NCBI GenBank assembly: GCA_024704765.1
Contig: JAKMXF010000110.1
Coordinates: forward strand, 620,001 to 684,000
Length of the DNA stretch: 64,000 nt
Source: Oopsacas minuta
Lineage: Eukaryota > Animalia > Porifera
Reading direction: 5' to 3'
The position numbers were made by a program, and so were the translations under genes. Below are positions 47 to 49,600 of the stretch, one piece after another (within the stretch, counting starts at the first letter, position 1; every line of letters begins with the position of its first letter). A model generated the notes under the pieces. That model was not told where the DNA came from. It made no database searches and worked only from the letters and a program-made list of their open reading frames with translations.

Positions 47-1228
47 ATGGCAGTAGAACCAGATGACAATGAACTTACGCTATACACACAAGTGGAGATC
101 GATGATAAAGAAGAAATCAGCTATCGTGGTTACAAGAAAGACTATTTATCTCAGAATCTAACTGAAATGGAGTATCAGTTAATAATATGTCCATTATGTA
201 AAGGCATAATGAGGGATGCGTGTGCCTATCAAGGAGAAATAACCTGTATGCTCTGTAGCCAAGATAATACTAACCACAACCCTGTTATTCGAATAAGGGA
301 ATTGGTCGCGAAACTAGGTATAAAGTGTCCACTTTTGAGAGAATGTAATTGGACAGGAGAGTTAATTGGAGCGGAGGATCATTTACTTATATGTGAAAGT
401 TCATTAATTTTGTGTCCTCTGGAGTGTAAAAGTGTGGTAAAAAGGTGTGAAATAGATACACATACGGGAGACCAATGTGAACTAAGAAAAGTGGAATGTG
501 AATTTTGTAAGAAAATTCTTCCGTTTCGCGGACTGATCAGCCATCTAGAAATATGTCCCTCTCATCCAATCAAATGCGAGTGTGGTAACGAATTCCAACG
601 TTGCAAACAGGAAGCGCATATTGAGACTGAATGCCCATTGGCTGAAGTGGAATGCCCTTATGCTATTTATAGCTGTGGTGTCGGGAAAATGTTCAGGAAA
701 GAGCTTTTGGCGCACAAAAAAGATTTTTACATCGAGCACCAAGATTTGTTGCAAAGCAAATTTGAAGAAGAAAATCATATTTTAAGGGAAAAGTTGAAAA
801 CGAAAAAAGACCTCGATGGATTTGAATGGGAAATATATAATTTTTCAAATTTTAAATTTGATAAAGACATAGAAGGGCCAACATTTTTCATCGGAAACTA
901 TGAACATGCTTGCGTGTTGCATTTAAGTGAGAAATTAAATATTAAGATCTTGAGGCTGCATTTCAATCCAAAAGAACGAATGGAAATTTACATAATCGAG
1001 TGCAGATTAGTAATCGACAAAACGATCGAAACACAAGAATCATACTTCGAAACGAAAATGTTTACGAAAAGAATTCCAATTGCAAATATGGTTGAGCCAC
1101 TATTCGCGTTAGATAAAACTTTGTATTCAAAATATATTCAAAAAGATGGCTGTCTTCGTATCAAAATGTACTTTGATTATGTCAACAGCATACGAAAGAA
1201 AGACAAGGACAAGATTAAAAGTCTGTAA
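47..1228 (+). CDS. TRAF-like protein (half-RING, TRAF zinc fingers, coiled coil, divergent MATH/TRAF domain)
   Basis: 393 aa single ORF; CPLC-x15-CMLC, IKCPLLRECNWTG..HLLIC, repeated C-x2-C...H-x3-C TRAF fingers, DGFEWEI and GPTFFIGNY MATH-like motifs. Confidence 0.85.
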   Translation: MAVEPDDNELTLYTQVEIDDKEEISYRGYKKDYLSQNLTEMEYQLIICPLCKGIMRDACAYQGEITCMLCSQDNTNHNPVIRIRELVAKLGIKCPLLRECNWTGELIGAEDHLLICESSLILCPLECKSVVKRCEIDTHTGDQCELRKVECEFCKKILPFRGLISHLEICPSHPIKCECGNEFQRCKQEAHIETECPLAEVECPYAIYSCGVGKMFRKELLAHKKDFYIEHQDLLQSKFEEENHILREKLKTKKDLDGFEWEIYNFSNFKFDKDIEGPTFFIGNYEHACVLHLSEKLNIKILRLHFNPKERMEIYIIECRLVIDKTIETQESYFETKMFTKRIPIANMVEPLFALDKTLYSKYIQKDGCLRIKMYFDYVNSIRKKDKDKIKSL

Positions 1229-1286
1229 TTCAGGACTAGTAACTCACAAGAAAACATTTGAGTTTCATAACTGTTAGTTATATATT

Positions 1287-1414
1287 GTGTAAGATAAAGT
1301 TATATACTTAGAGTGTAAGATAAAGTTATATACTCAGAGTGTAAGATAAAGTTATATACTCAGAGTGTAAGATAAAGTTATATACTCAGAGTGTAAGATA
1401 AAGTTATACTCAGA
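1287..1414. repeat. 26-bp minisatellite (GTGTAAGATAAAGTTATATACTCAGA) x5
   Basis: Four 26-bp units plus one 24-bp unit read directly; no spacers. Confidence 0.95.
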
Positions 1415-1577
1415 GTGAATTATCAAAAGATTGCAAAGCTAGTTAAGAAGCTATTTAGGGCATTATGTAATACCCTAAAGGAATATTTAGTTTCACGATA
1501 GTCTTATAAGCTTAGAAAGAGTAGGATTATCATTTTTGATCTGAAATACGAAGGGTGCATATATTTGTACGGCTACT

Positions 1578-2849
1578 ATGGCAGAGAAAATTGACAGCTC
1601 GATCCCTGATGACGTAGACCAAATACTTTATGTTGAGTTTGAATCTGAAAATCAAACATCCTATCGTGGATATAAATTTGATTATTTAGCTCAGAATCTT
1701 ACAGAAATGGAGCAAACTTTTGTGTTTTGCCCTAAATGTTCTGGAATAATTCGAGAAGCATGTTCTATACAAGATTCGAACCTGTGTTTGGAATGTTGCG
1801 AAAACGAGGAAAATCCAAAACCAGCAAATATGTTGAGAAGTTCTGTTTCAACATTATCAATTAAATGTCCTCTTCTGAGAGATTGTGGTTGGACAGGAAT
1901 ACTTATTGATAGTGTCAAACATTTGAAAGAATGTCGTGTTTTCCTTGTGGAGTGTTCTCTGGAATGTGGTGCTGTGATCAAAAGGTGTGAAATTGAAGAC
2001 CACATTCACAATCATTGTCCCAATCGAACTGCAAGCTGTCTATTTTGTGATGAAATACGTCTTCATAAATTCATACCAGGACATCTCATCGTTTGTCATG
2101 CTTATCCGGTCAAATGCATTTGTGGAAGTGAAACACGTCGTGATCAACATGATATACATATTGAGACTGAATGCCCATTGGCTAAAATAGAATGTCCGTA
2201 TGCTAAATATAGCTGCAATATTGGTGCTATTTTTAGAAAAGATCTATTAACTCACAAAAGAGAATTCTTCATAGAACACCAAGACATGATTGAACAGGAA
2301 AACTGTAAGCTGAAAGAAGAACTATATCAGTTGAAAGAAGAACAATATCAGTTGAAAGATAATCACCATAACCTTGAGGGAAGGTGCAATGACCTCTGGA
2401 AACGAGAAAGCGCTTTGAAACAAGAATATTTTCAAATGAAACAATCGTTGAGGCTTAAGAAACAGCTATATGGGATTGAAATCAGTGTTAGGCCAACTCA
2501 ATCGGAAACTACCAGAGAAGTATTCAATATTGGTAGCTACAGATTCAATTGTATTGTGAGTGTCCAAGACTCAATAAATATCGAATTAATGAGGCTATCT
2601 TCAAGTTTTGGTAATGACAAAAATGTCATTTGCATTACTGACTGTGTAGTCTGTCTAAAAGGAACAAAACAGGTGAATGAACCTTTCTCTACCAACATAC
2701 AACTGTCTTCAAGAGCAGTTATTGGAGGAACCATCTCTATTATGGAAATAAGAAGACGCATTTTTTCATTGTTTATCCAACCAGATGGCACACTGGATAT
2801 GAGTGTGTACTTCGACTATGACTATGTAACATACAAGGGATTATTCTAG
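1578..2849 (+). CDS. TRAF-like protein
   Basis: 423 aa; YRGYKFDYLAQNLTEME, CPKC-x15-CLEC, TRAF fingers, coiled coil with a duplicated heptad (ELYQLKE/EQYQLKD), MATH-like C-terminus. Confidence 0.85.
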   Translation: MAEKIDSSIPDDVDQILYVEFESENQTSYRGYKFDYLAQNLTEMEQTFVFCPKCSGIIREACSIQDSNLCLECCENEENPKPANMLRSSVSTLSIKCPLLRDCGWTGILIDSVKHLKECRVFLVECSLECGAVIKRCEIEDHIHNHCPNRTASCLFCDEIRLHKFIPGHLIVCHAYPVKCICGSETRRDQHDIHIETECPLAKIECPYAKYSCNIGAIFRKDLLTHKREFFIEHQDMIEQENCKLKEELYQLKEEQYQLKDNHHNLEGRCNDLWKRESALKQEYFQMKQSLRLKKQLYGIEISVRPTQSETTREVFNIGSYRFNCIVSVQDSINIELMRLSSSFGNDKNVICITDCVVCLKGTKQVNEPFSTNIQLSSRAVIGGTISIMEIRRRIFSLFIQPDGTLDMSVYFDYDYVTYKGLF

Positions 2850-2979
2850 CTGTAATCAATGTTTGATAGAATTATTTATGTTGTTTTGGCACTGATATTT
2901 GTGGGATATATTGTCAAATTCCAAGCAATGCATTACGAATGTATACACACAGCATAGAATCAACTAGTAAGAAAAATGC

Positions 2980-3226
2980 AAATATCACCTTTAGTGGAAA
3001 CATATTTCACACCCTATAATCTAATTATAGAACACTTTCATATGCAAGGTGATATTCTTACGGAGACAGGGTTTGCATATCTTCTCAACCAGCGTGAATA
3101 TAGGCTTGTACTTCCGACTAATGCTATTATTCGCCACCCCTGTTTCAGTGTAGAAATCTTTCTTCTCAGATTGTATTAGCAATTGGTACTGAGTTATGTA
3201 CATATCACCCTCAGCTATCACTGCCA
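2980..3226 (-). pseudogene. Inverted 3' fragment of the TRAF-like gene at 4874-6049
   Basis: IAEGDMYITQYQLLIQSEKKDFYTETGVANNSI..YKPIFTLVEKI..VFYN* is near-identical to the last ~65 aa of 4874-6049, and 3'UTR homology continues; no N-terminal part. Confidence 0.85.
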
Positions 3227-3371
3227 ACATCAATAACTTGTCCGACACGCAACTTACATAATTTGCTCCCTGGTGATTGTCCCAATTTTTATTTAATCCT
3301 GTAATAGACCCTCTCTCGCCCTTGAAAGGTAAAGGAAAACAGATTAAAATATGATAAAATATTAGTGTTAT

Positions 3372-4538
3372 TCACAAGGGAGAATATTTCAGGAGAATAA
3401 ATCCTTTGTAAGTTATATAGTCATGATCAAAGAATAATTTCAAATAAATTTTTCCATCTGGTTGAATGTATCTTCGGTAAATACTTCTTTCCAATGCATA
3501 CAGAAATATACAATCATTTTTTATCATTTGAGAATACAGCCTTTCCTTCCATACGAATGGGTTCTCAGAAGGTGCAGTTTCTTCTAAAAGCATTCTAAAT
3601 TCAGTTATACATATAATGTTGCTGTCATTTCTAAAACTGGAAGCTAACCTTTGTACCCAAAATCTCATTGAATTATAAACAACCACTATACACTCGAATT
3701 CATAGCTACCAATTCGGAACACTTTTTTGTGATTCAATTCATCGTTTGGATCTATCTCGAATTCTACACATTCCAAATCTTTCTTACAAGTCAATTCCTT
3801 TCGTAATCGATTGCATTCTCCTTCCAGCATATCCTGGTGTTCTATGTAAAATTCTTTTTTGTGAGCTAATAAGTCTTGTCTGGGTATTTTACCAATTTTG
3901 CAGCTGTATTCAGCATACGGACATCCAATCTTAGTCAATGGGCACTCAGTCTCAATATGCTCTGCTAGTTGCGAACGACTCTTCATAATTCCACACTTAC
4001 ATTTGATGGGATGGGCAGGACAGACTTTCAAATGGTCTGTTAAACCCTTGAAGAGAATTATAATGTCACAATACTGACACTTAACTTCGCGAAGTGGACA
4101 ATCATGTTTTGTGTGGTTTCCAATTTCACATCTCTTGATGACATGGCCACATTCCAGAGGACATTTGACAAGTAAGCTGCCACATTCTTTCAAATGCTCT
4201 TCACCCTCAAGAATCTTTCCAGTCCATTCACAATCTCTCAAAAGTGGACATTTGATTTTCAAATTAGCTACAGATGCCCTAACTTTAGCAACAGGAGCGA
4301 GAGAAGAATTCCCACAGATTTGACATGTGGTATCACCTTGATTGGAAATAGCGTCTCGAGCTAATCCCAAACACTTCGAACAGGACATTAAACTAATTTC
4401 CATGTCAGTCAAATCCTGAGAAAGATAATCAAGCTTAAATCCAAGATAATTACAACTATTATCCTTCTTTTGTTCCACATAAAGTAGTCGCTGAATATTA
4501 TCTGGTACAAGTTTATCTTCTCCCAATTTTACTGCCAT
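3372..4538 (-). CDS. TRAF-like protein
   Basis: 388 aa; GFKLDYLSQDLTDME, CSKC-x15-CQIC, KCPLLRDCEW, TRAF fingers, MATH-like C-terminus. Confidence 0.85.
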   Translation of the reverse strand: MAVKLGEDKLVPDNIQRLLYVEQKKDNSCNYLGFKLDYLSQDLTDMEISLMSCSKCLGLARDAISNQGDTTCQICGNSSLAPVAKVRASVANLKIKCPLLRDCEWTGKILEGEEHLKECGSLLVKCPLECGHVIKRCEIGNHTKHDCPLREVKCQYCDIIILFKGLTDHLKVCPAHPIKCKCGIMKSRSQLAEHIETECPLTKIGCPYAEYSCKIGKIPRQDLLAHKKEFYIEHQDMLEGECNRLRKELTCKKDLECVEFEIDPNDELNHKKVFRIGSYEFECIVVVYNSMRFWVQRLASSFRNDSNIICITEFRMLLEETAPSENPFVWKERLYSQMIKNDCIFLYALERSIYRRYIQPDGKIYLKLFFDHDYITYKGFILLKYSPL

Positions 4539-4873
4539 TTACAATTATAACAAATACAAATGTAAGCATTATTAAACTCAAATACACATTTATGGTTGCA
4601 ATATATATATTGCAATGCAACTACACTTTCGATATTAGGGCATGAAGTAATACCCTACTTAATGTGATCACATCTAACAAGACGAAGAGCAAGGAAATAT
4701 ATTAAATATCTGAATTAATTAGGAAACTAGCATCACTTGAGTTTGGTGAATAATTAGGAGAAGTTATCATTGATTCTTATCATATAATATATTAATTGAA
4801 ATATAATACAACGAGTTTGCTTACAAATAGCAGCGAGGCATAGTTATATGATTTATTATATTAGAAATCCAAA

Positions 4874-6049
4874 ATGGCTGAATTCGAATTAATCCAAGAC
4901 AATATCAGTGAGATTATGTATCTCTCCAAAGGGGAACGAGGGAAAACGGGGGCATTCGGTTATCGGAGGGATTATCTCAATCAGATTCTGAGTCAAGCGG
5001 AGGAGAAATCACTAATCTGTCCGTCGTGTAAAGGAATAGTAAGAGAGGCTTGCAAGAAAACTGGAGTTACAGAATGTAAAAACTGTGGATGGTATGTGGA
5101 CCTTGATAAAGTGGATGGCGTGCGTGAAAAGGTAGCTAAATTGAGCATAAAGTGTCCGCTTATGAGAGAGTGCGGATGGAAAGGGATGCTGTGTGAAGGT
5201 GAAGCACATTTGAAACAGTGTGACAGTTATTTGCTGACGTGTCGGCTGGGCTGTGGTGGAATTATCAAAAGGTGTGAATTTATTAATCATACAGAAGTTA
5301 TTTGCCCATTGCGAGAAGTAAAATGCGAATTCTGCCAAAAAAAATATCTAGCACAAGATTTGCCTGGACATTTTGAAACCTGTCCCGCTCATCCTATCAA
5401 ATGCAAGTGTGGGGAGGAATACAGTCGCGAAGAAGAGGCTGTACACATCCGCACTGAGTGCCCGTTGGGTAAAATTCAATGTCCGTATTATAAGTACAAG
5501 TGTGACGTGGGTATAATACAACGGAAGGACCTTATGACGCATAAACAAGATTACCTTGTTCAGCATCAAGATTTGGTGATCGCATATTTGGAGAAAGAGA
5601 ACACTGAATTGAAAATGCAAATCCAAAATCTCTCAAGCGAAATGCGATTTAAGAAAGAAATGGATAGCTTCGAATGGATCGTAACTATTAAGAAGAATGA
5701 AGATGAATTCCTCAAAGGGGAATGTGATGTCTCAGAGACAGAATATGTAGGCTCTGTAATCACATCAGGGAGCTCTAGGTTCAGATGCATGTTGCGTGTC
5801 GGACAAGTTATCGATGTGTGTATTTGTAAGCTGAACAATAGCATGGCAATGATAGCTGAGGGTGATATGTACATAACTCAGTACCAATTGCTAATACAAT
5901 CTGAGAAGAAAGATTTCTACACTGAAACAGGGGTGGCGAATAATAGCATTGGCAGGAAGTATAAGCCTATATTCACGCTGGTTGAGAAGATATACAAACC
6001 ATGTCTCCGTAAGAATAACACCTTGTATATAAAAGTGTTCTATAATTAG
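4874..6049 (+). CDS. TRAF-like protein
   Basis: 391 aa; GYRRDYL, CPSC-x15-CKNC, TRAF fingers, coiled coil, DSFEWIV MATH start. Confidence 0.85.
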   Translation: MAEFELIQDNISEIMYLSKGERGKTGAFGYRRDYLNQILSQAEEKSLICPSCKGIVREACKKTGVTECKNCGWYVDLDKVDGVREKVAKLSIKCPLMRECGWKGMLCEGEAHLKQCDSYLLTCRLGCGGIIKRCEFINHTEVICPLREVKCEFCQKKYLAQDLPGHFETCPAHPIKCKCGEEYSREEEAVHIRTECPLGKIQCPYYKYKCDVGIIQRKDLMTHKQDYLVQHQDLVIAYLEKENTELKMQIQNLSSEMRFKKEMDSFEWIVTIKKNEDEFLKGECDVSETEYVGSVITSGSSRFRCMLRVGQVIDVCICKLNNSMAMIAEGDMYITQYQLLIQSEKKDFYTETGVANNSIGRKYKPIFTLVEKIYKPCLRKNNTLYIKVFYN

Positions 6050-6293
6050 ATTATAAGGTGTGAAATAAGATCCCACTTTAGGTGATATTTGTTTATATTT
6101 ATGTTTGGATTACTTTTATACTTTTTGTAAATGTAGTGTCTATCAAGTAATGTTTGAATTCTAGTTAAGTTGGAAACAGCTGATTATTTGTTATTATCTG
6201 ATTGTTTGGGTGAATTAGGTTAATCTTGAATAATTTACAAATTTTACTGATTTTAATGTTTTAAATATCACACAAGTATCAATATTATCAAAG

Positions 6294-7574
6294 CTAAAAG
6301 AATACTCCCGTGTAAGTAACATAGTCATAGTCGAAGTATACTCCGATATTCAGTGTGCCATCTGGTTGGATGTGCCGTGAAAATGTAGAGTATTTTATTT
6401 CCATAATAGCATTCGCTTTTCCAATATCTGATTTTAGAAACAGTTGTTTGTTCGTTGAGAAAGGTTCTTTCAAGACTCCTGTTCGCTCTAGACAGACTAC
6501 ACAGAAAGTTATGTAAATGACATTCCTGTCATTTCCAAAGTCTGTAGTTAGCCTCCTTAAAATGATTTTGATTGAATCAACTACAGTCACAATACAGTCG
6601 AATCTGTAACAACCAACATAGAACTCTTGTTTCTTAGATGGCGATTGTCTCGGTATAACACTGATTACAACCCCGTATAACTGTCTTTTAAGCATCAACG
6701 ATTGCTTCATTAGATAACATTCTTGTTTCAAATCACTTTCTCGTTTCTCGAGGTCATTGCATCTTCCCTCAAGGTTGTTGTGCTTATCTTTCAACTGATA
6801 TAGTTCTTCTTTCAGCTTACAGTTTTCCTGTTCAATCATGTCTTGGTGTTCTATGAAGAATTCTCTTTTGTGAGCTAATAGATCTTTTCTAAGAATAGCA
6901 CCAATATTGCAGCTATATTTAGCATACGGACATTCTATCTCAATCTGTGGGCATTCAGTCTCAATATGTAAACTTATTAGACCACGACGTATTTCAAGTC
7001 CACAAAGGCATTTGACCGGATAAGCATGACAAACGGTGAGATGTCTTGGTATGAATTTATGAGGACGTATTTCTTCACAAAATAGACAGCTTACAAGTCG
7101 ATGGGGACAATGATTGTTAATGTGGTTTTCAAGTTCACACCTTTTGATCACAGCACCACATTCCAGTGAACACTCTACAAGGAAAACACGACATTCTTTC
7201 AAATGTTTGACACTATCAATAAGTATTCCTGTCCAACCACAATCTCTCAGAAGAGGACATTTAATCAGCAAATTAGCAACTGAGTTTCTCACCTTAATAA
7301 CAGGATTTGCGTGGTGTTGAGACATCCTACAAGGAAAACAAACAGTTTCGCCATGGGAAGAGCAAGCATCTCGAATTAATCCAGAACACTTCACACAGGA
7401 CATGAAATTCATTTCCATCATTGTCAAATTCTGAAATAAGTAATCGAACCTATATCCCCTGTATTGGGGCAATTCGTTGCTGTCTTTACCAACTTTTGAT
7501 GAGCGTACATGAACATAAAGTATCTTTGAAATATCATCTGCAAGTAACTGTGTGTTAGAAATATTTTCCGCCAT
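6294..7574 (-). CDS. TRAF-like protein, inverted paralog of 1578-2849
   Basis: ATG at 7574 (MAENIS; the track start at 7613 is TTG); CVKC-x15-CFPC; long identical tracts shared with 1578-2849. Confidence 0.85.
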   Translation of the reverse strand: MAENISNTQLLADDISKILYVHVRSSKVGKDSNELPQYRGYRFDYLFQNLTMMEMNFMSCVKCSGLIRDACSSHGETVCFPCRMSQHHANPVIKVRNSVANLLIKCPLLRDCGWTGILIDSVKHLKECRVFLVECSLECGAVIKRCELENHINNHCPHRLVSCLFCEEIRPHKFIPRHLTVCHAYPVKCLCGLEIRRGLISLHIETECPQIEIECPYAKYSCNIGAILRKDLLAHKREFFIEHQDMIEQENCKLKEELYQLKDKHNNLEGRCNDLEKRESDLKQECYLMKQSLMLKRQLYGVVISVIPRQSPSKKQEFYVGCYRFDCIVTVVDSIKIILRRLTTDFGNDRNVIYITFCVVCLERTGVLKEPFSTNKQLFLKSDIGKANAIMEIKYSTFSRHIQPDGTLNIGVYFDYDYVTYTGVFF

Positions 7575-7771
7575 AGATACTCGTAGATTGCAATAGATAT
7601 TCCATTGCCACAACTTTGATTGGAGTTATATACAAAGATTGTTTACACAATTTTGGGTTCATAATAATTAGTAAACACAAACAATAGTGTAAGAAATTTC
7701 TATCAAAAAGTCAACAAATGCGTGTTTATAGTTCAAAAATAAAGAATTAATGTATTTGGCATTCGAAATAT

Positions 7772-9124
7772 TTATTTAATGTGATTCTTTAGGTCAAAGT
7801 AGATAAACATTATTACTGTGTTGTTCGCTTGGGCATGCTTTGTGAAAATATTCTGTGGCACTGTGAAAAGAGAATTGCTATTTTTTCCAACAACTGCTTT
7901 CAAATCCGGCCAAATCTCCTGGAAATATGACGAACTATCGAACTCATTGTTCCCAATTATTAACCGAATCTCCGTAATATACGTTTCATCTTTATCACTA
8001 CCTTTTGGAACCCCGCTCAATCTTGTGATGAGGAACTCGTGAGGTACACCAACTTTCATGGAGCATTGGAATTTGTAATTGCATATGTAGAAAACTGGGC
8101 TCGTCAATTCGCGCGCAAATGTCAACTGATCGAGTTCAATCTTCCACTCAACGCCTTCAAGATCTTTCTTGATTCTCATCTCTGCTTTTAGAAGACTGAG
8201 TTCAACTTTGATGTCATGGTTATCTTTCACTAGTTTGATTTGTTGCTTCTCAAGTTCAAGAATTCGCTGTGCATCGGAATCCTTACTTTCTGAAGTTGAT
8301 CTGTCCAGAAATGAAAATTTCAAATTTTCTTTTCCAGAAGATTGCGGGGTTTTCATCGCCTCCCGTTCATCCAATTTGGCCAAAATCATATCTTGATGCT
8401 CGACGCAAAATTCTTTTTTATGCGTCAAAAGGTCCTTGCGTGCCATAACGCCAACAGAACATCCATACTTGCCAAAAGGACACCTAACTTGTCCAAGAGG
8501 ACATTCTTTATCCACATGTGACCCCAACATGTCCCGTCTACACTTATTGCCACAACCACATTCAATTGGCGAAGCGAAACACATTTCAGAATGAGCGAGT
8601 AGGTCTTTGTATTGAATCTTAATCCTACAAAATTCGCATTGAGTTATACGAAACAAACAATCGTTTTTAAGGTGTAAATCCATATCACACCTTTTAATCA
8701 CAGCGCCACATTCAAGCTGACACCATAAACGGAAATTTCCACATTCCTTAAGATGCTTTTCAGCGTCAAGGAGCTTGCCCACCCAAGCACAATCCTTCAG
8801 TAACGGACACTTTATACCTAATTTTGCAACTGAATTCCTCACTTGATTCACAGGGTTCGGATTCTTTTGGTTTTGGCTACAAAGCATGCAGGTTGTTTCA
8901 CCTTCGGAAGCAATCGCGTCTCGCATTATTCCATTACAAGTTGGACACACTATGAATTGTCGCTCCATTTCACTCAATTCCTTCACCAAATAACTGTCTT
9001 TGTAACCTCGATATTCCAAGATGTACTCCTCCCCGAATGTTCCCCATAGCTTAACGCCTCTATTCTCGCACTGTACGTACAGTTTAGGATCCAAATCGTC
9101 TGGCGCTTCGAATAGAGAATCCAT
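7772..9124 (-). CDS. TRAF-like protein
   Basis: 450 aa; CPTC-x15-CMLC, TRAF fingers, DLEGVEWKI and SPVFYICNYKF MATH motifs. Confidence 0.85.
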   Translation of the reverse strand: MDSLFEAPDDLDPKLYVQCENRGVKLWGTFGEEYILEYRGYKDSYLVKELSEMERQFIVCPTCNGIMRDAIASEGETTCMLCSQNQKNPNPVNQVRNSVAKLGIKCPLLKDCAWVGKLLDAEKHLKECGNFRLWCQLECGAVIKRCDMDLHLKNDCLFRITQCEFCRIKIQYKDLLAHSEMCFASPIECGCGNKCRRDMLGSHVDKECPLGQVRCPFGKYGCSVGVMARKDLLTHKKEFCVEHQDMILAKLDEREAMKTPQSSGKENLKFSFLDRSTSESKDSDAQRILELEKQQIKLVKDNHDIKVELSLLKAEMRIKKDLEGVEWKIELDQLTFARELTSPVFYICNYKFQCSMKVGVPHEFLITRLSGVPKGSDKDETYITEIRLIIGNNEFDSSSYFQEIWPDLKAVVGKNSNSLFTVPQNIFTKHAQANNTVIMFIYFDLKNHIK

Positions 9125-9323
9125 TTTAGATTTGATGTCCTATTACTTTACTATTGAATTGAATTTTGGGTATTAACTGCAATATATATATATTAGTGAC
9201 TATTACTCCTACATTAGTACATATTGAATTACATTAGTAATACAAACACCAGTCTTTTCAATTAGCCCCCTGAAAGTGTGATTAGCACTTCTGTGAAACA
9301 TTATTGAGTTATATTAAGGTAGA

Positions 9324-9378
9324 CAGTGGTACCCTAGCTGCTTGGTGGCCCACGGACGACAGCAGGGGTCAACAGAAT
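9324..9378. mobile_element. hAT-like MITE fragment with CCACGGACGACAGCAGGGGTC core
   Basis: Starts CAGTGGTACCC (resembles CAGTGGTTCCC hAT ends); same core recurs at 24040, 27675 and 56403. Confidence 0.45.
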
Positions 9379-10002: not shown

Positions 10003-11247
10003 CTATGTTTCCATAGTCTTTTCAGAATTGACTTCAAAGTAGAATCTCAGAAACAAGGAATTATCTGCTGTAATACAATCTCGATAATCAAAGAAATAAC
10101 ATGAGTAGAATATCTCACTGTCTTTACCGATACAAAGCTCATAATTCAGTATTCCATCTTTTATATTTGATTTAGTTATATCTTGTTTGTTAATACTAAT
10201 AATTCTGTATTGAGTTATGTAGGCTTTCCCTAAAAATCTGTCAAAGTCTCCAGGCAACCTTTGTAGATAGAAACGGAGATAAATTTCAGAAAATGTTGTC
10301 TTCTTGGTGAGATAAATTCCAGATAATATTGAGTCCTTGATGAGATATATTCTCAATTTGTAGTTGTTAATATAGACTATCGGTCCTTCTAGATTGCCAT
10401 TAATAAGTAGTTTATAAAAATTCTTTATTTCCCACTCAACTCCATCAAGTTGCTTCATTATCTTTCCTTCTATTTCCATTTTACTTTGTTTCTTCTTAAA
10501 ACTATTATTTTCCTTTCTCAGTTCCTGAATTTCAATTAAGCTCATGTCTGTGTGTTCTATATAGAACTCCTTCTTGTGAGCTAGGAGATCTTTTCTTAAG
10601 ATAGACTTTACTTTACATCCATACTCTGTGTATGGACAGCTAATCTCTTCAAATTGACACTTAGATTTGTGTTTAGACAATTGACATCTTTGAAATTCAT
10701 CTCCGCAATTATTGGGACAAGAAATGGGGTAATCATCGCAAACTTCATTATGTTTTTTCATGTCCTTAGCTTTTACTTGTCTTTCACAAAACTTACACAC
10801 TACCTCGCGGAAAACACATGTATTCGTCTTATGATTATCATATTCGCCTCTAGCAACAAAATCATTACAGTCTGTGCATTCAACTACAAAGCTATTACAA
10901 TTATTCAAATGTTTTTCAGCTTCTGATAATTTACCATTCCAAGTACAATCTCTGAGGAGAGGACATTTAACTTCCAATTGATTGACAGCATTATGCACCA
11001 TTTTAACCGGGTTTAAGTCTTGAGATTCGCTACAAACTAAACAAGTTGTCTCGCCGTTACTAAGAGAAGCTTCCCGCATTATTCCAGAGCAAATCTCACA
11101 AATAACAAGCCCTTCCTCCATTCCAGTCAGGTTCCTAGCTAAATAGTCCCTCTTATACCCACAATGGATTGATTTGGCTTTCTTACATTTCTTAACATAG
11201 AGAAGGTCTTCTCTGTCGTCAGGTAGTGGAACCAGTTTAGATGTCAT
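10003..11247 (-). CDS. TRAF-like protein
   Basis: 414 aa; CEIC-x15-CLVC, TRAF fingers, QLDGVEWEI and GPIVYINNYKL MATH motifs. Confidence 0.85.
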   Translation of the reverse strand: MTSKLVPLPDDREDLLYVKKCKKAKSIHCGYKRDYLARNLTGMEEGLVICEICSGIMREASLSNGETTCLVCSESQDLNPVKMVHNAVNQLEVKCPLLRDCTWNGKLSEAEKHLNNCNSFVVECTDCNDFVARGEYDNHKTNTCVFREVVCKFCERQVKAKDMKKHNEVCDDYPISCPNNCGDEFQRCQLSKHKSKCQFEEISCPYTEYGCKVKSILRKDLLAHKKEFYIEHTDMSLIEIQELRKENNSFKKKQSKMEIEGKIMKQLDGVEWEIKNFYKLLINGNLEGPIVYINNYKLRIYLIKDSILSGIYLTKKTTFSEIYLRFYLQRLPGDFDRFLGKAYITQYRIISINKQDITKSNIKDGILNYELCIGKDSEIFYSCYFFDYRDCITADNSLFLRFYFEVNSEKTMET

Positions 11248-11564
11248 TTAGTAGATAGAAATTCAGTTCACTAATATATTCTAGTTATACTTCTCCAGTA
11301 AATTTGTGTTGCCTACAAATGTAATGTGATATCTATTAGAACAACATTAGTGTAACTCATTGCAGAAAAGCAATAATATTTTATTATTCACAACAAGGCT
11401 GTAGGAGACCGTCCCGTTGGTCAGGTTTCAAACGCACCAATTCCATAAATTTTGTATATGGCGGACAGAAGCGATGTCCCAAATGTGTCAATTATTCTGA
11501 GACTCTAGTGTATACACATACGCACAAGCTTTGTAGATTATTTATTACTTCCAGCGCTGAGGTG

Positions 11565-11705: not shown

Positions 11706-11835
11706 AGGCAACCATTCCAGAACTGAGCCACTATTCTATGGAATATTAGTCAATACAGTAAAATGCTAATAAAATCAAAGATGTATTATACTAACTAGAA
11801 TAGACAAGATACCTAACAGAACTATTCAAAGTATC

Positions 11836-13165
11836 TTATTTAAGCTTATAAGGATTTGTTGGTATTTGTCTGCAAAAGATGTCTAGCTGAGGTATCTCAA
11901 TGAAAGGATCAGATGGTGTTTGACGGGTGGGTCTATTTGTATCTTGGTTACAGGACCTCAATGTTTCCATAGTCTTTTCAGAATTGACTTCAAAGTAGAA
12001 TCTCAGAAACAAGGAATTATCTGCTGTAATACAATCTTGATAATCATCGAAATAACCTAAGTAGGATATCTCACTGTCTTTACCGATACAAAGCTCATAA
12101 TTAGTATTCCATTATTTATATTTGATTTAGTTATATCTTGTTTGTTAATAATAATACTTCTGTATTGAGTTATGTAGGCTTTCCCTAAAAATCTGTCAAA
12201 GTCTCCAGGCAACCTTTCTAGACAGAATTGGAGTTTATTTCTATAAAATATTGAGTCCTTGATGAGAAATATTCTCAGTTTGTAGTTGTTAATATAGACT
12301 ATCGGTCCTACTAGCTTGCCATTATTAGGTGGTTTATCAACATTCCTTATTTCCCACTCAACTCCATCAAGTTGCTTCATTATCTTTCCCTCCATTTTCA
12401 TTTCACTTTGTTTCTTCTTCAAGTGTGAATTCTCACTCTCTAGTATTTTCATTCTAGTTAGACTCATGTCTGTATGTTCTACGATATACTCCTTCTTGTG
12501 AGCTAGGAGATCTCTTCTTAACATAGACTCTGCCTTACATCCATACTCTGTGTAGGGACAGCTAATCTCTTCTAACTCACATTCAGACTTGTGTTGAGAT
12601 AATTCTCTTCTTGGAAACTCTTCTCCACAATTATTAGGACAAGAAATAGGATACTCCTTACACACTTCATTATGTATTTCCAGATCTTTAGCCTTTCCTT
12701 GTTTACCGCAGTATTCACATTCTATCTCACGTAAGATACACATATTCACTTTATGGTTATCATATTCACCTTTAGTAACAGTTACTTTACAATATACACA
12801 TTGTAGTACAAAGCTATTGCAATTATTCAAATGTTTTTCAGCTTCTGATAATTTACCATTCCAAGTACAATCTCTGAGGATAGGACACTTTACTTCCAAT
12901 TGATTGACAGCATTATGCACCATTTTAACAGGGTTAAACTTCCTTGGACCACAATTTAAACAAGTTGTCTCGCCGTTATAATAGAAGCTTCCCGCATTAT
13001 TCCAGAACACACTTTACAAACAACAAGCCCTTCCTCCATCTCAGTCAGGTTCCTAGCTAAATAGTCCCTCTTATACCCACAATGGATAGATTTACCTTTC
13101 TTAACAATCTTAACATAGAGCAGGTCTTCTCTGTTATCAGGTTTAAGTTCCAGTTTAGATGCCAT
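11836..13165 (-). pseudogene. Frameshifted TRAF-like tandem paralog of 10003-11247
   Basis: ATG 13165 (MASKLEL); single-base deletions near 12980 (ATTATAACGGC vs CTTAGTAACGGC) and near 12105 (ATACTAATT vs ATACTGAATT) relative to the intact paralog; 3'UTR also duplicated. Confidence 0.8.
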
Positions 13166-13713
13166 GAATACTTTATCAATGAATTTCTTAATTAACATTT
13201 GTTGTATTTGTGTTTATATTATAGTTAGTTATAAATAGCAGACTATTAGTGAGGATATTTACAGCTTCTATTAATCAGTCATTGTATATTTGAATATTTT
13301 CTGAATTCTGTTTATACTAGTTTGTTGCCTAACTTTGTAGTTCAGGCTTCGTGTTACAAAATCCAAGTGTTTCATGCATCAAATTTGCCTCTAAATTTCA
13401 ACTTTCAAAGTTGCTTATAATTTTGTTGCATGGAATATTCTATAATTAACACTCACGACATAACTTTGTGAAAAGAGTTGTATTGTGTATGTTTGTTATG
13501 CATTAGAATATAGCAATAGTTACAACAAAAAGTTGGAAATGTTCAAGTTTAATAATTACGAATAAATAAATGTTTACAAGTGTTAATCTGTAAATAAAAA
13601 GTGATTCAATGCGTAAGAAACTAATTTTGCAAAAATGAAAGTATTTTTAGTAAATATTTAGTAAAAATTATGAAAAATAGCGATTAGAATTGTTAAATAG
13701 TAAACAGAAAGGC

Positions 13714-34040: not shown

Positions 34041-34094
34041 CTAGCAGTTCAAATTGGCTTATAGAATGTAGCAATCAATCATGGAATGTAAATA

Positions 34095-43600: not shown

Positions 43601-46600
43601 GAAGGTCCGCCTTATCGGACATGTTTTGCCGTCTATTTCCCGCCAAAAAGCTTAATTGTCCCGCATGGTGCATTCTAGACTAATGCTAAGAGATTATTGT
43701 AGATAATAAACAAACGATTTAGATAAACATTTATAAATAGGATATAATCTAAAAATAGTATCAGCAGAGTTCAATATGGAAGTAGAACCTGTTTACAGAA
43801 TCAGTACACTTAGATTGGTATATCGATTCAGTTTCTGCATCTATGTCCAGTCTAAGGTTATGAGTGTTATTGATTGTCTTCTCTTTACCCAGCTGATCAA
43901 TACTGCTATACTTTAGTATGCCAGGTGATATACAGCTGTCAAATTCTCCTGATATCCTACGGACACGGAACAACACCAGGTTATCCTTTACCCATCCTAC
44001 CAGCTGTAAATGGTATCCTTTGATGTAGAAATCAGGTCCCACCATCTCCCCCTTACTCCCCGTGATCTGGTGACCCTTCAAACGCCACTCTGCACCCTGG
44101 AAACACATTTTCAGTGACTCTACGAACTTTGAGATATTAGGTATGAAAACAATCGCGGAGATTTGGCATTTCAAATAATTTTGGATTTCTTTCAGTGCCA
44201 AATTTTCGTTCTCCAAGTGTGCCAGTTTCATTTCAAAGTGCTGTGCTTTACTTTCGATTTTGTGATCGGTCATTTCATTAGTATTTGCTGACTGAAAAGA
44301 ACATCCAAATTTTGCGTAAGGACATTTGGCACTGAATTCGCACTCCGCAATATGAATTTCCAAATTTCCCAGTCCTCCAGTCCAGTCACACCCTGATTTA
44401 CTGAACGGACAATTCCAGGAAAATTTTTCGATACTCTCCCGCATAACAACCGATGGGACAGCTAATTCCTCATTTTCACAACAGTTTCTACAAGTTGTCT
44501 TTCCCTCTAAAACTAGTGCTTCACGCAAAATACCTTGACAGACTGGACATGTGACTAATTCCACTCTAGATGGCAGCTTGTGGAGCATATCTTTCTTATA
44601 CCCCCTAACCGATTTTCTTGTCCCTCTTGTCTCGACAGTTACACAAATAGATTCCTCTATAGGAGCGGCTGAAGCGGATGATTGTTGGTTAGTAGCCATT
44701 TAAGTTGAGGCATAAACTGAGACTGTATTATGCATAATTGCCAAGGTTATATTAGTAATCACTATCACGTGATTCTAATAATACGACTCACAAACAAATA
44801 TGATGTCACTTCAATTTTCCGCAGTATTTATAATATAATAGGCTGATAAAGTCCATAAACCAATTTGGATCTCAGATTTCATATTTGTTCAAACTTGAAG
44901 TCATACCGATTGGAAGATAGCGTGGACTATAAGGTTTGTTGTTGATTTCATAGGGAAATAGTTGGTCCACGGGATTTTTTAGAGTGAAGGTTCGATCTAC
45001 AGTGTACCTGCATAAACGGGTTGACAGCGACGCCGAAAATGCTACCCAATTCTGCCAAATCCGGCCAGGGCTGCCGTGGGAATGGAATGGGAATTGAATT
45101 TCCATTCCCATGACAAGTGTGCAAATCTTCCTTTTGTGGAGGTTCATTTGTATTTTTGATTACAAATATGTATTCATGTTATTTGCATCCAATTACACCC
45201 AAAACTACATAGTTTTCTAATTAAAATCTTTACAAACAAACATACAACAATCCTGTTTTAATTATATAAATATACACTTGTCAATTTCCCCGATTTTGCG
45301 AAGAGTCCCGCTTTTTCGGATATGTTTTGAAGTTTATTTACACCAAAAGTTGCCAAAAAGCTGAAATGTTGTTGTTGCATTCCAGGCTAAAGAAACTTGC
45401 TACGTCCCGCGATGTCCCGTTTTAGGCACAAATTGGATAATGTACAAAGAAAGGTCAACCATTGGTGCCTTCGGATCAAAAATGTCAAAGCGCACTTCTG
45501 AGATTATTGTAGATAATAAACAAACGATTTAGATAAACATTTATAAATAGGATATAATCTAAAAATAGTATCAGCAGAGCTCAATATGGAAGTAGAACCT
45601 GTTTACAGAATCAGTACACTTAGATTGGTATATCGGTTCAGTTAGTACACCTATGTCCAGTCTATGGTTATGAGTGTTATTGGTTGTCTTCTCTTTACTC
45701 CGCTGATCAATACTGCTATACTTTAGTATACCAGGTGATATACAGCTGTCAAATTCTCCTGATATCCTACGGACACGGAACAACACCAGGTTATCCTCTA
45801 CCCGTCCCACTAGCTGTAAATGGTATCCTTTGATGTAGAAATCAGGTCCCACCATCTCCCCCTTACTCCCCGTGATCTGGTGACCCTTCAAACGCCACTC
45901 TGCACCCTGGAAACACATTTTCAGTGACTCTACGAACTTTGAGATATTAGGCATGAAAACAATCGCGGAGATTTGGCATTTCAAAGAATTTTGGATTTTT
46001 TTCAGTGCCAAATTTTCGTTCTCCAAGTGGGCCAGTTTCATTTCAAAGTGCTGTGCTTTACTTTCGATTTTGTGATCGGTCATTTCATTAGTATTTGCTG
46101 ACTCAAAAGAACATCCAAATTTTGAGTAGGGACATTTGACACTAAATTCGCACTCCGCAATATGAATTTCTAAATTCCCCAGTGCTCCAGTCCAGTCACA
46201 CCCTGATTTACTGAACGGACATTTCCCGGGGATGGTCTCGATGCCCTGCCGCATAACAACCGATGGGACAGCTAATTCCTCATTTTCACAACAGTTTCTA
46301 CAAGTTGTCTTTCCCTCGAATACAAGTGCTTCACGCAAAATACCTTGACAGACTGGACATGTGACTAATTCCACACTAGATGGCCGCTGGTGGAGCATAT
46401 CTATCTTATACCCCCTAAACGATTTACTTCTCCCTCTTGTCTCGACAGTTACACAAATCGTTTCCTCTATAGGAGCGGATGATTGTTGGTTAGTAGCCAT
46501 TTGAGTTGAGGGAAAATATCTGAGGTATAAATAAGGCATTATTATGCATAATTACCAAAGAATTACTCATATTAGTAATCAATGCGCATGTGATGCTAAA

Positions 46601-49600
46601 AATACGAACTTAATACTAATATGATGTCATGTCAATATAGAACTTAATACTAATATGATGTCACGTCAATATAGAACTAGCAGTATATATGTATAATAGG
46701 CAAATAAGTTCCATAAACGAATTTGGATCTCAGATTTCATATTTGTTAAAGTAAAATCCTACTGATTGGAAGAAAGCAAGGACTATAAGGTTTGTTGTTG
46801 ATTTCATAGCGAAATTGTTGGTCTACGGGATTTTTCAGAGTGAAAGTTCGATCTAGAATGTAACCTGCATAATGGGTTGACAGAGACGCCTCATAATGCT
46901 ACCCGTTTTTGCCAAATCCCCCACGGCAAGTGTGCAAATCATTCTTTTGTGGAGGCTCATTTGTATGGGACTAGGAATTCGCTCTATTTATTTTTCACTC
47001 CGTTTCCAGAAGTTTCCCATTTCCACAGCTCCGTTCGTGGAGGTTACACTTGTATTTTAGATTTTCGAATATTTATTCTTGTTATTTTCCCCCTATTACA
47101 CCCGAATAGCTAAACTAACATTGACTTATTTTAGCTATAAAATGGATGTCGAATTCAGAGAAATCAGTGATATACAATTCAAAGAGCTGGTATGCGTATC
47201 TAGACAAGATACAGGTCACGGAGGGTACAAGAAAGATCTACTGTGTCAGAATTTCAGTGCCCTAGAAGAATCACTACTCCTGTGTCCGAGCTGTAACGGA
47301 GTAATGCGAGACTCAAGCGTTTGGGAAGGTAAAACAACCTGTCATGACTGCTGTGAGAATACAACCAACTCTGCATGCTCAGTACTGCACCGTAAAAACA
47401 TAAATGAACTTCAAGTAAAGTGTCCCCTTGAAGAAGGAGGGTGTCCTTGGAGTGGCAAACTGTGTGACATCAAGAACCACCTCGCCCTTTGTAAATACCT
47501 CTCGGTTGAATGCCACTATGCTAAATTTGGGTGCCGTTTCAAGTCGGTTATCCCAGGGGAGGTTGCGAGACACGTCACAGATTCGATGTTCGAACATTTG
47601 GAAATGCGAATGAATTTGATCGAATTAGACAACGCACAATTACGTAACCAAAATACCTCGATTAAGCTACAACTCAATGCTCTGATGAAAAAAGCACCAA
47701 TTTCAAAGTTCGTAGAGTCACTGAAAATGTGTCTCCAGGGTGCAGAGTGGAGTTTGAAGGGTCACGAGATCATGGGGAGTAAGGGGGAGATAGTAGGACC
47801 TGATTTCTACATCAGAGGATATCATTTACAGCTGGTAGGACAGGTAGAGGATAACCTGGTGTTGTTCCGTGTCCGTAGGATATCAGGAGAATTTGACAGC
47901 TGTATATCACCTGGTACACTAATGTATAGCAGTATTGATCAGCGGAGTAAAGAGAAGACAACCAATAACACTCATAACCATAGACTGGACATAGGTGTAC
48001 TAACTGAACCGATATACCAATCTAAGTGTACTGATTCTGTAAACAGGTTCTACTTCCATATTGAACTCTGCTGATACTATTTTAGATTACATCCTATTTA
48101 TAAATGTTTACCTATATTGTTTGTTTATTCTTTATAATAGATTATTACATTAAGATCCCCTTTCAATTGTTTTCAACCTCTCCCATTCCAGACCGCCCTT
48201 CGGGTGTGTTAAGAGACCAAATCAATACCTATGTAGTCTGGATTGGGACAATAATAGACACATACTGGGTCCATGTTAACGAGAAACTTGTTTCAGCTGC
48301 ACATGATGCCCATCGAAGCATACGGACGGGTAGCGTTTCTTTATCATTATCTCATCAGTTTATGACGTTATCATAACGCAAAGTAGACAATTCAGGAAAT
48401 TTCAATGATTCAACTTGTAAATATGTGTAATTAAGCGTGTTAGAGGAGATTTGTGAAGATATAATCACTACTATTCACCCGTTAATTAGTAAATATATTG
48501 TGTAGTGAATTTCACTGATAAAATGGTGAAATAATAACAATACTCATGTGACAGGTAAACTTGAGGAATTTGATTTATTTGACACAAATAATGTTACAAC
48601 AAAGATTCATATTTAGCAAGTCGAAGGTCAGACCGTAATATCTCTTCATTTTCAATCTCATTCTCAGTCATCTCAACCTTCTGAACGAACCAACGTAATA
48701 TCTTGTATCTTCTCCCAGATGTAGTCTTACCATATGAATAAATAGCCGCGTACAACAAGCAGAATATTATCGTCCAGAATATACTGCAAATTGGAACTAA
48801 CATGAATACAGCCCAAACTCCATGCATTTTGTATAAGAAGCGTAGATTACGGATAATATATATGGAAAATTATATGACTATAATCTTTTGAAGGGAATCA
48901 TTCGAGGATAACTATTCGTAATTCAATGAAAAATGTAGGGAGAATGGTAACTATGCAAAGATAAAATGGAATGTTTTAACTGAGTAGCCGTATGAATGTA
49001 ATGAAAAAATCCAATCACAGATAGGTGTGAAAAGGTGAATATATACCACACATAATTTGTAGAATATCAGTGTCCGTATATACACACACAGGTTCTGATG
49101 CGATCCTCTAATACGTAAATCTATATACTATATTAGAATATGTATAAGTGCTAATTCATCTAATTAGTTCCATCTAAGATGATATTAATCTGGAACTGTA
49201 ATATTTCAATTTAACTGATGACGTCAGAAAGTGAAAAATTGGTTTATGAAAAGTATAAAATGAAAGAAGTCAAATTCTATAAAGGAATTGAAATTCTGAA
49301 TTTTTAAGGAATATTATTTACAAATATGGATCAACAAAATACTATAAATGAGAATTTAACACCTAAAATTTCCAAAGAAAAATCGGGTAGAGGAAAGAGG
49401 GGAAAGAGTAAATCAAAAAGGAGAATATCTTTACATCCAGTGTCATTTGTATTCATGGCATGTAAGTTATAATTATATCAACAAACAGCTGTGAAAACAT
49501 CACATGTTGATTAGGTTAAAACAGGATTTGATTTGTTTGTTTGTGTTTTTAGGTGTACATCTCTCAGGGGCGATTGTTGATGCAATTACATTTATATAAC

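What the first reader, a model, noticed from the sequence alone, without database searches (positions are those of the whole stretch)
47..48074. Expanded TRAF family with an invariant half-RING (CxxC-x15-CxxC)
Seen: all 13 intact paralogs have exactly CxxC-x15-CxxC, then a short linker to the first finger, after a GY(K/R)xxxL-type motif. Established: TRAF RINGs are C3HC4 cross-braced domains (human TRAF6 [24 protein letters not shown]...KCPVD), where ligands 1, 2, 5, 6 form zinc site 1 and ligands 3, 4, 7, 8 form site 2. The copy at 17031 keeps REAVQT but has lost the C-x-H pair and the whole segment carrying the last pair. Inference: only site 1 survives, so this is a conserved one-zinc module, probably unable to bind E2. 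The family would act as scaffold or decoy adaptors with highly variable MATH domains.
Basis: partly seen in the sequence, partly recalled or inferred. Interest (0 to 1): 0.75.

Follow-up and report, generated by a model that had tools for sequence, protein, structure and literature searches.

The report
One-zinc RING remnant in glass-sponge TRAFs
A tandem array of TRAF signalling-adaptor genes in the glass sponge Oopsacas minuta carries a shortened RING domain that keeps four of its eight zinc-binding residues, so the proteins probably cannot act as ubiquitin ligases themselves; the feature is conserved across a large, apparently glass-sponge-specific family that I found described in no paper.

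Summary
The window, a contig of the glass sponge Oopsacas minuta, holds 13 intact intronless TRAF-like genes. All 13 have CxxC-x15-CxxC after a GY(K/R) motif, followed 21-24 residues later by the first TRAF zinc finger. A 14th copy looks frameshifted in the assembly, but short-read contigs contradict that.

The module derives from the RING domain:
- The profile-profile match to canonical sponge TRAF RINGs has probability 95.7% (E 9e-9).
- The predicted fold (pLDDT 89) lies on the TRAF6 RING (Z 7.6, rmsd 1.8 A, 61 residues).
- All 50 listed matches among 48,161 PDB chains are RING, U-box or SP-RING folds.
- Across 135 diverse members only the four Cys are invariant, so there is no second zinc site.
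- About 19 residues are missing: the central helix and one CxxC knuckle.

Whether the surviving second pair is ligands 5/6 or 7/8 cannot be settled. The residues that contact Ubc13 in TRAF6 are deleted or charge-reversed, so loss of canonical E2 binding is a sound inference, but it is untested.

The C-terminal domain has a MATH fold that Pfam does not detect, and it is the most variable part.

The family is large: at least 150 clusters, with spacing of 15 to 18 residues. Its only named members are from Oopsacas.

Verdict: a new variant of a known kind, of moderate interest.

The parts
47..1228 (+). TRAF-like gene, 393 aa: N-module with half-RING (nt 188-256), TRAF fingers, coiled coil, MATH fold
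   Evidence: ORF; motif; Pfam zf-TRAF; AF2 model pLDDT 85; TRAF6 N-terminal region and MATH fold matches
1578..2849 (+). TRAF-like gene, 423 aa; half-RING nt 1728-1796
   Evidence: Mosaic with 6294-7574: fingers dS 0.055, N-module dN 0.43
3024..3227 (-). Fragment of a MATH domain, 90% identical to residues 324-391 of gene 4874-6049
   Evidence: tblastn
3372..4538 (-). TRAF-like gene, 388 aa; half-RING nt 4314-4382
4874..6049 (+). TRAF-like gene, 391 aa; half-RING nt 5018-5086
6294..7574 (-). TRAF-like gene, 426 aa counted from its ATG; half-RING nt 7329-7397
7772..9124 (-). TRAF-like gene, 450 aa; half-RING nt 8879-8947; ortholog in L001 803-2167
10003..11247 (-). TRAF-like gene, 414 aa; half-RING nt 11032-11100
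11962..13180 (-). 14th copy. It reads as frameshifted at about 12978 (inside the half-RING) and about 12102 in the assembly, but is probably intact
   Evidence: tblastn; sequence. An extra base behind 12978 is present in contigs of all four runs; an extra base behind 12102 is present in one contig in one of the four runs
17031..18389 (+). TRAF-like gene, 452 aa; half-RING nt 17181-17249, keeps REAVQT as in TRAF6; ortholog at 81% identity in L001
   Evidence: N-module model
20628..21455 (+). Short form, 275 aa: N-module, fingers and coiled coil, no MATH; half-RING nt 20769-20837
   Evidence: A second species has an ortholog of the same length and the same ending (L001 11903-12724)
21545..22345 (-). 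Short form, 266 aa: N-module and fingers ending in a hydrophobic C-terminal tail (candidate membrane tail anchor), no MATH; half-RING nt 22139-22207
   Evidence: The hydrophobic tail is also present at L001 13058-13810
43761..44699 (-). Short-finger form, 312 aa: N-module, finger 1, last finger, coil, MATH; half-RING nt 44481-44549
45571..46500 (-). Short-finger form, 309 aa; half-RING nt 46291-46359; 89% identical to 43761-44699
47142..48074 (+). Short-finger form, 310 aa; half-RING nt 47283-47351. Its MATH is nearly identical to that of 45571 (dS 0.07) while the N-terminal half has diverged

Best explanation
These genes belong to a glass-sponge lineage of the TRAF adaptor family in which the N-terminal RING has been cut down to a single zinc site. 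Compared with canonical sponge TRAFs, about 19 residues are gone: the central helix and one of the two downstream CxxC knuckles. The Cys-x-His pair is replaced by a tight turn. What remains is knuckle, beta-hairpin, knuckle, which binds one zinc where RING site 1 lies. It still packs with the pre-RING GYK strand and with the linker helix leading to finger 1, as in TRAF6. The fold assignment rests on sequence comparison and a predicted structure; no structure has been solved.

Inferred: two of the three E2-binding elements are deleted and the remaining Ubc13-contact positions are charge-reversed or polar. The module therefore cannot recruit an E2 in the canonical way, and these proteins are not ligases on their own. 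They most likely work as oligomerising scaffolds. The conserved N-module and finger 1 would give a structural or dimerisation platform. The coiled coil and the fast-diverging, recombining MATH domain would select partners. Variants without MATH, or with a membrane tail, would act as modulators or anchors.
For: Homology to the RING:
- HMMER aligns the motif with the TRAF6 RING, with a 17-residue gap.
- Weaker hits are all RINGs: TRAF2, RAG1, RBBP6, BRCA1.
- hhalign of 135 N-modules against 66 canonical sponge and fish TRAF RING regions gives probability 95.7%, E 9e-9.

Fold:
- The AF2 N-module has pLDDT 89 and pTM 0.76.
- VIA gives TRAF6 Z 7.6, rmsd 1.8 A, 61 residues (model 20-81 on TRAF6 54-132), and TRAF2 Z 6.2.
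- In an exhaustive search of 48,161 chains only 65 reach Z>=2, and all 50 listed are RING, U-box or SP-RING.
- The whole-protein model matches TRAF6 RING plus fingers at TM 0.77.

One zinc site only: the four Cys are the only invariant columns in 135 sequences, and 62 of 135 have no Cys or His between the pairs.

Selection:
- Ortholog dN in the half-RING is 0.09-0.11 with saturated dS, giving omega about 0.05.
- The half-RING and finger 1 are the best-conserved parts.

E2 surface, using TRAF6 contacts D57, E69 and P106 (PMC6874479) and the I72/L74 mutant that no longer binds Ubc13 (PMC5702613):
- The D57 equivalent is K or R in 118 of 135.
- The E69 equivalent is I or V in 81 of 135.
- The L74 equivalent is polar.
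- The P106 segment is deleted or not conserved.

MATH: Foldseek matches to SPOP MATH and TRAF6 TRAF-C at E about 4e-5 to 7e-5.
Against: - No biochemical data exist, and no RNA run was available to show expression.
- The structure is a prediction made without zinc, and I could not read its coordinates to check that the four Cys cluster.
- VIA Z values of 6-8 fall in the range the tool calls middling. The case rests on all top hits being one superfamily plus the sequence homology.
- E2-binding surfaces vary among TRAFs anyway (PMC5702613), so changed contact residues alone do not prove loss of every E2.
- U-boxes and SP-RINGs show that RING-like folds with fewer zinc ions can still be active ligases.
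Confidence: 0.65

Rival explanations
1. The half-RING proteins are non-catalytic partners that activate a true RING ligase in trans. They would pair through the RING-like module and linker helix with a complete TRAF or other RING, and would supply finger 1 and the linker helix to hold ubiquitin in the closed E2~Ub state. TRAF5 does this for TRAF6.
For: PMC5702613 shows that a TRAF6 dimer needs only one E2-binding RING and that TRAF5 can donate finger 1 and the linker helix. Its authors suggest that TRAFs which bind no E2 could act this way. Finger 1 and the linker helix are fully retained here and finger 1 is the best-conserved part (52% identity). An Arg sits in the linker helix in 67 of 135 members.
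Against: That Arg lies one residue away (position -10 from finger 1) from the invariant Arg of canonical TRAFs (-9), and position -9 is not basic in most members. No complete-RING TRAF of Oopsacas was found in my searches. Those searches are word-limited, and other windows are only said to hold RING/TRAF genes (s1-237744, s1-257419, unchecked).
Confidence: 0.18
2. The module is still a ligase domain that binds an E2 by a non-canonical surface, as reduced-zinc RING relatives (U-box, SP-RING) do.
For: U-box and SP-RING folds appear among the structural matches. The module is under strong purifying selection, so it does something specific.
Against: U-box and SP-RING keep the full-length fold including the central helix and second loop. 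Here about 19 residues are physically missing: model residues 20-81 lie on TRAF6 54-132. The acidic Ubc13-contact positions are basic or hydrophobic.
Confidence: 0.1
3. The CxxC-x15-CxxC unit is an unrelated zinc ribbon that replaced the RING, so the resemblance is convergent.
For: Two knuckles around a beta-hairpin is also the zinc-ribbon layout. There is a weak hit to ribosomal protein S27 (E 0.35) and a sub-threshold Pfam YdjO hit on one copy.
Against: The flanks are homologous to canonical TRAFs on both sides: the GGY motif before and the 23-residue linker to finger 1 after. The REA(V) stretch after the first pair is also shared. Every top fold match is RING or U-box and no zinc ribbon appears.
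Confidence: 0.04
4. It is a complete two-zinc RING that uses other ligands for the second site.
For: Some copies have an extra Cys eight residues after the first pair (51 of 135).
Against: No further Cys, His or Asp column is conserved. Only four Cys are invariant in 135 sequences, and 62 have no Cys or His in the loop.
Confidence: 0.03

Closest known systems
Canonical TRAF proteins (TRAF2/3/5/6; demosponge TRAF4-like proteins such as Dysidea avara P0215)
   Same: GGY motif before the RING, the first CxxC and the following R-x-A stretch, a 20-24-residue linker helix to a CCHC finger 1, further zf-TRAF fingers, a coiled coil and a C-terminal MATH fold.
   Different: No Cys-x-His pair and only one downstream CxxC. 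About 19 residues, including the central helix, are missing. There are five extra residues between GY and the first Cys (20 against 15). The MATH domain is too diverged for Pfam, whereas demosponge TRAFs score for the Pfam MATH families PF22486 and PF21355.
TRAF1 and other RING-less TRAFs (my own knowledge: vertebrate TRAF1, Drosophila Traf4, C. elegans trf-1)
   Same: TRAF adaptors without ligase capacity of their own that work by hetero-oligomerising and scaffolding (PMC5702613 discussion for TRAF1-TRAF2).
   Different: Those have lost the RING altogether. Here a structured one-zinc remnant is kept under purifying selection across more than 150 clusters.
Reduced-zinc RING relatives: U-box (no zinc), SP-RING of Siz/PIAS/Mms21 (one zinc), PEX12 RING (one zinc; my own knowledge)
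   Same: RING-superfamily fold with fewer than two zinc ions. They appear among the fold matches.
   Different: They keep the full-length fold with the E2-binding helix and loops, and replace zinc by hydrogen bonds. The sponge module is physically shortened and lacks those elements.
RAG1 and LNX RING-plus-zinc-finger dimerisation modules
   Same: A RING followed by a helix and a zinc finger that together form a dimer platform. They match at Z 4.7-5.3 and weakly by sequence.
   Different: Both have complete two-zinc RINGs.

Membership tests
TRAF family | TRAF-type zinc fingers (Pfam PF02176) | tested here: met
   7 of the 10 scanned copies score 37-74 bits over the 27-bit cut-off. The remaining three are 43761 (Sina_ZnF only, sub-threshold), 47142 (16 bits, sub-threshold) and 45571, which was not scanned.
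TRAF family | C-terminal TRAF-C/MATH domain after a coiled coil | tested here: inconclusive
   Foldseek matches the modelled C-terminus of gene 47-1228 to SPOP MATH and TRAF6 TRAF-C (E 4e-5 to 7e-5, TM by target 0.5-0.64). No Pfam MATH family is hit in any copy. Two copies lack the domain.
TRAF family | N-terminal region homologous to the TRAF RING region (GGY motif, RING, linker helix) | tested here: met
   hhalign probability 95.7%, E 9e-9 against 66 canonical TRAF N-termini; the best fold matches are the TRAF6 and TRAF2 RINGs.
RING finger (C3HC4, cross-braced, two zinc) | Eight conserved zinc ligands forming two sites | tested here: not met
   Only four Cys are invariant in 135 sequences and none has C-x-H in the loop. 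No Pfam RING family at E<=0.1.
RING finger (C3HC4, cross-braced, two zinc) | E2-binding surface: first loop, central helix and second loop | tested here: not met
   About 17-19 residues carrying the helix and second loop are absent. The D57, E69 and L74 equivalents are K/R, I/V and polar. Binding itself was not testable.
RING/U-box fold superfamily | Knuckle, beta-hairpin, short helix topology that can be superposed on RING domains | tested here: met
   All 50 listed matches among 48,161 chains are RING, U-box or SP-RING. TRAF6 scores Z 6.5-7.6 at rmsd 1.8 A. This rests on a predicted model.
U-box | RING-like fold stabilised without zinc ligands | tested here: not met
   Four invariant Cys in two CxxC knuckles.
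Zinc ribbon | Two knuckles on a three-stranded sheet, with sequence or fold match to ribbon families | tested here: not met
   Only a chance-level S27 hit (E 0.35). No ribbon appears among the fold matches.

The most novel reading that the evidence does not exclude
Glass sponges as a class may have converted their whole expanded TRAF repertoire to a one-zinc, E2-blind module. If so, the half-RING with finger 1 is a new functional domain, either a dedicated dimerisation platform or a trans-activator of other ligases. TRAF signalling in these syncytial animals would then run without TRAF-intrinsic ubiquitin ligase activity.
Probability: 0.25. Interest if true: 0.65.

Novelty: new variant of a known kind. 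Interest (0 to 1): 0.5.

Why it matters
TRAF RINGs are the catalytic heart of NF-kB-type innate immune signalling. Known non-catalytic TRAFs have simply lost the RING. Here a shortened RING with one zinc is preserved under purifying selection in a very large lineage-specific expansion: at least 150 clusters at 50% identity, in tandem arrays of a dozen or more genes. It is a natural experiment in what the non-catalytic parts of a TRAF RING do, such as packing against the linker helix and finger 1, and dimerisation. It also gives a compact domain for structural work and a sequence signature (profile A3) for annotating glass-sponge immune-type gene arrays, which current Pfam models label only as zf-TRAF. 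It bears on how innate immune adaptor families diversify in early-branching animals.

Tried and rejected
- **Pfam:** a scan of ten copies gave no RING and no MATH family, only zf-TRAF and sub-threshold noise such as YdjO, GRAM and CLZ.
- **Literature:** four searches (TRAF with Amphimedon, Oopsacas, sponge MATH expansion, glass sponge) found no description of this module.
- **Expression:** no RNA run holds the stretch. The four holders are contigs of one sample, so expression could not be assessed.
- **Which CxxC survived:** HMMER (5/6), MAFFT and hhalign (7/8) disagree, and the spacing arguments are symmetrical. I left this open.
- **dN/dS by domain:** ortholog pairs are saturated at synonymous sites. 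Close paralog pairs are mosaics of exchanged segments, so ratios per domain are not clean rates. I used them only qualitatively.
- **Taxon of the unnamed ENA assemblies:** not resolved. One set of contigs is labelled BUSC20-1 with SAMN144229xx. I think these are Vazella pourtalesii glass-sponge metagenomes, but the paper I read gives only the BioProject number, so this is unverified.
- **Canonical RING TRAFs in Oopsacas:** a search seeded with a Dysidea TRAF returned none. That search is word-limited and capped, so absence is not shown.
Full report
**Source and gene content**

The window is AT-rich (GC 0.34-0.40) with no N. One homolog that lies on a contig of the same length as the window's own protein (841,185 bp) is named by NCBI 'TNF receptor-associated factor 5-like [Oopsacas minuta]'. 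The window is therefore from the glass sponge Oopsacas minuta (Hexactinellida).

**Observation**

Thirteen intact ORFs between 47 and 48074 each carry CxxC-x15-CxxC. The motif follows a G-[YF]-[KR]-x-x-[YFLM]-L motif. It is followed 21-24 residues later by the CCHC first TRAF finger.

A tblastn of all paralogs against the window adds two items:
- One full-length copy at 11962-13180(-).
- A MATH fragment at 3024-3227(-).

The extra copy reads as frameshifted in the assembly, once inside the motif and once near the 3' end. Contigs of all four public runs of the same sample carry one more base behind 12978. That restores the frame and an x15 motif. One contig in one of the four runs does the same behind 12102. 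A 14th intact copy is likely, and the shifts are probably assembly errors.

**Architectures**

- Eight genes have the N-module, about five TRAF fingers, a coiled coil and a C-terminal beta domain.
- Three genes (43761, 45571, 47142) lack the middle fingers.
- Gene 20628 stops after the coiled coil.
- Gene 21545 ends in a hydrophobic tail.

Both short forms have orthologs of the same length and ending in a second species (locus L001), in the same order next to an anoctamin exon. They are conserved genes, not decaying copies.

**Family assignment**

Pfam finds only zf-TRAF, with no RING and no MATH family. An AlphaFold2 model of gene 47-1228 has mean pLDDT 85. Its best Foldseek match is the TRAF6 RING-plus-fingers structure 3hcs (E 1.3e-8, TM by target 0.77). 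Its C-terminal domain matches SPOP MATH and TRAF6 TRAF-C (E about 4e-5 to 7e-5). So the C-terminus has a MATH fold too diverged for Pfam. The canonical demosponge TRAFs recovered do score for the Pfam MATH families.

**What the CxxC-x15-CxxC module is**

*Sequence*
- A profile of the 13 paralogs aligns with TRAF6. The first CxxC falls on ligands 1 and 2, REAV on REAV, and the second CxxC on ligands 5 and 6. A 17-residue gap covers the segment holding ligands 7 and 8.
- With the N-terminal profile alone the weak PDB hits are RING domains (TRAF2, RAG1, RBBP6, BRCA1), apart from chance-level hits to ribosomal protein S27 and two nuclear receptors.
- A profile-profile comparison of 135 N-modules (A3) with 66 canonical TRAF RING regions from demosponges and fish (A5) gives probability 95.7%, E 9e-9.

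*Structure*
- The N-module alone, modelled on the 135-sequence alignment, has pLDDT 89 and pTM 0.76.
- VIA-align puts model residues 20-81 on TRAF6 residues 54-132: 61 aligned, rmsd 1.8 A, 31% identity, Z 7.6. TRAF2 scores Z 6.2.
- In an exhaustive comparison with 48,161 chains only 65 reach Z>=2, and all 50 listed are RING, U-box or SP-RING domains.
- The ESM Atlas look-up by features and by structure also returns RING and TRAF clusters.

*Ligands*
- Across the 135 sequences the only invariant columns are the four Cys.
- 62 of the 135 have no Cys or His at all between the pairs.

The module is therefore a RING derivative with a single zinc site, and the two-zinc alternative is rejected.

**Which ligands survive**

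Canonical sponge TRAFs have 17 residues from ligand 2 to ligand 5, then 8-20 from ligand 6 to ligand 7, then 23 from ligand 8 to finger 1. The glass-sponge family has 15-18 and then 20-24. Both outer spacings are kept.

The simplest history is one in-frame loss of about 19 residues that merges the ligand 5/6 and ligand 7/8 knuckles into one, plus loss of Cys3 and His4. HMMER calls the survivor 5/6. MAFFT and hhalign call it 7/8. The data cannot decide.

In the model the second CxxC closes the second strand of the hairpin (strands at 47-50 and 53-56, Cys at 56 and 59).

**E2 binding**

TRAF6 contacts Ubc13 through D57, E69 and P106 plus hydrophobic contacts (PMC6874479). The I72D/L74R mutant no longer binds Ubc13 (PMC5702613). 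Counts are out of the 135 N-modules:

| TRAF6 position | Equivalent in the half-RING family |
|---|---|
| D57 | K or R in 118 of 135 |
| E69 | I or V in 81 of 135; T, S or L in 36 more |
| I72 | K or R in 54 of 135; I or V in 34 |
| L74 | polar |
| P106 segment | deleted or not conserved |

The central helix is reduced to one turn. Loss of canonical E2 binding is therefore a well-founded inference, not a result.

**Selection and variability**

Ortholog pairs between Oopsacas and the L001 species are saturated at synonymous sites. Their half-RING dN is 0.09-0.11, giving omega near 0.05. Mean pairwise identity among the 13 paralogs:

| Region | Mean identity |
|---|---|
| Half-RING | 47% |
| Finger 1 | 52% |
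| Linker | 26% |
| MATH | 26% |

Close paralogs are mosaics:
- Genes 1578 and 6294 share nearly identical fingers (dS 0.055) but very different N-modules (dN 0.43).
- Genes 45571 and 47142 share MATH (dS 0.07) but not the rest.
- Two L001 genes share the N-module but not MATH.

Segments are being exchanged between array members.

**Extent of the family**

A profile of the N-module plus finger 1 against 1.84 billion representatives finds 367 clusters at E<=1e-3 and 205 at E<=1e-10. Of the 149 fetched top hits, 136 show two CxxC pairs spaced 15, 16, 17 or 18 apart, and none of those has C-x-H in the loop. The other 13 did not fit the scan pattern; most are truncated or variant copies.

The named members seen were all from Oopsacas. 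The two full-length word searches also returned two named outsiders, a Dictyostelium and a Dysidea protein, both with complete RINGs. The other members come from unnamed ENA assemblies. These include a 1.64-Mb contig with at least 17 x17-type genes and contigs that I take to be Vazella glass-sponge metagenomes (unverified). Canonical demosponge TRAFs such as Dysidea and Amphimedon keep the full RING. The family looks specific to glass sponges, but its range is not proven.

**Mechanism**

I commit to non-catalytic TRAF adaptors. The one-zinc N-module keeps the structural and probably the dimerisation role of the TRAF RING, linker and finger 1 unit. MATH diversification and shuffling supply specificity. 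The MATH-less and tail-anchored forms act as modulators or anchors.

The main rival is that these proteins donate finger 1 and the linker helix to a catalytic partner, as TRAF5 does for TRAF6 (PMC5702613). Against it, the linker Arg sits one position off the canonical one, and no complete-RING partner was identified here.

**Novelty**

No Pfam family and none of the four literature searches describes this module. It is a new variant of a known kind, a TRAF with a truncated one-zinc RING.

Noticed in passing
window 1578-2849 vs 6294-7574; 45571-46500 vs 47142-48074; L001 2603-3850 vs 4468-5676: Paralog pairs are mosaics: one domain block is nearly identical (dS 0.05-0.07) while the rest is highly diverged (dN 0.4-0.9). 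This points to gene conversion or domain swapping inside the arrays.
   Followed up: partly
window 21545-22345 (-) and L001 13058-13810 (-): A MATH-less member ends in a conserved hydrophobic stretch of 16-17 residues in both species. It is a candidate tail-anchored membrane form of the half-RING and finger protein.
   Followed up: partly
window 12978 and 12102: The assembly lacks one base at each place compared with short-read contigs of the same sample. All four runs show this at 12978 and one contig in one run at 12102. The apparent TRAF pseudogene is probably an assembly artefact.
   Followed up: yes
window N-termini of all copies, e.g. 47-130: A conserved D-x-LLYV-type strand lies 10-20 residues before the GYK motif, and the family has five extra residues between GY and the first Cys (20 against 15 in canonical TRAFs). 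The strand is predicted with confidence but has no counterpart in the TRAF6 crystal constructs.
   Followed up: no
window 17031-22345 and L001 8226-13810: Three TRAF-like genes lie in the same order next to an anoctamin exon in two glass-sponge genomes, so the nested arrangement is conserved.
   Followed up: partly
proteins P0225, P0228, P0257, P0262, P0281, P0287 (demosponge TRAFs, not in the window): Some canonical demosponge TRAF RINGs have Gln, Asn, Tyr or Ser in place of the His ligand, so site 2 is also eroding in other sponge TRAF expansions.
   Followed up: no
window 19089-20351 (+): A 420-aa ORF with a coiled-coil-like N-terminus sits between TRAF-like genes inside the array. It was not analysed.
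   Followed up: no
window 35304-36686 (-): A 460-aa ORF has a complete C3HC4-type RING pattern and a second Cys-rich motif (RWD/RBR-like by eye). The genome therefore encodes ordinary RINGs close by.
   Followed up: no
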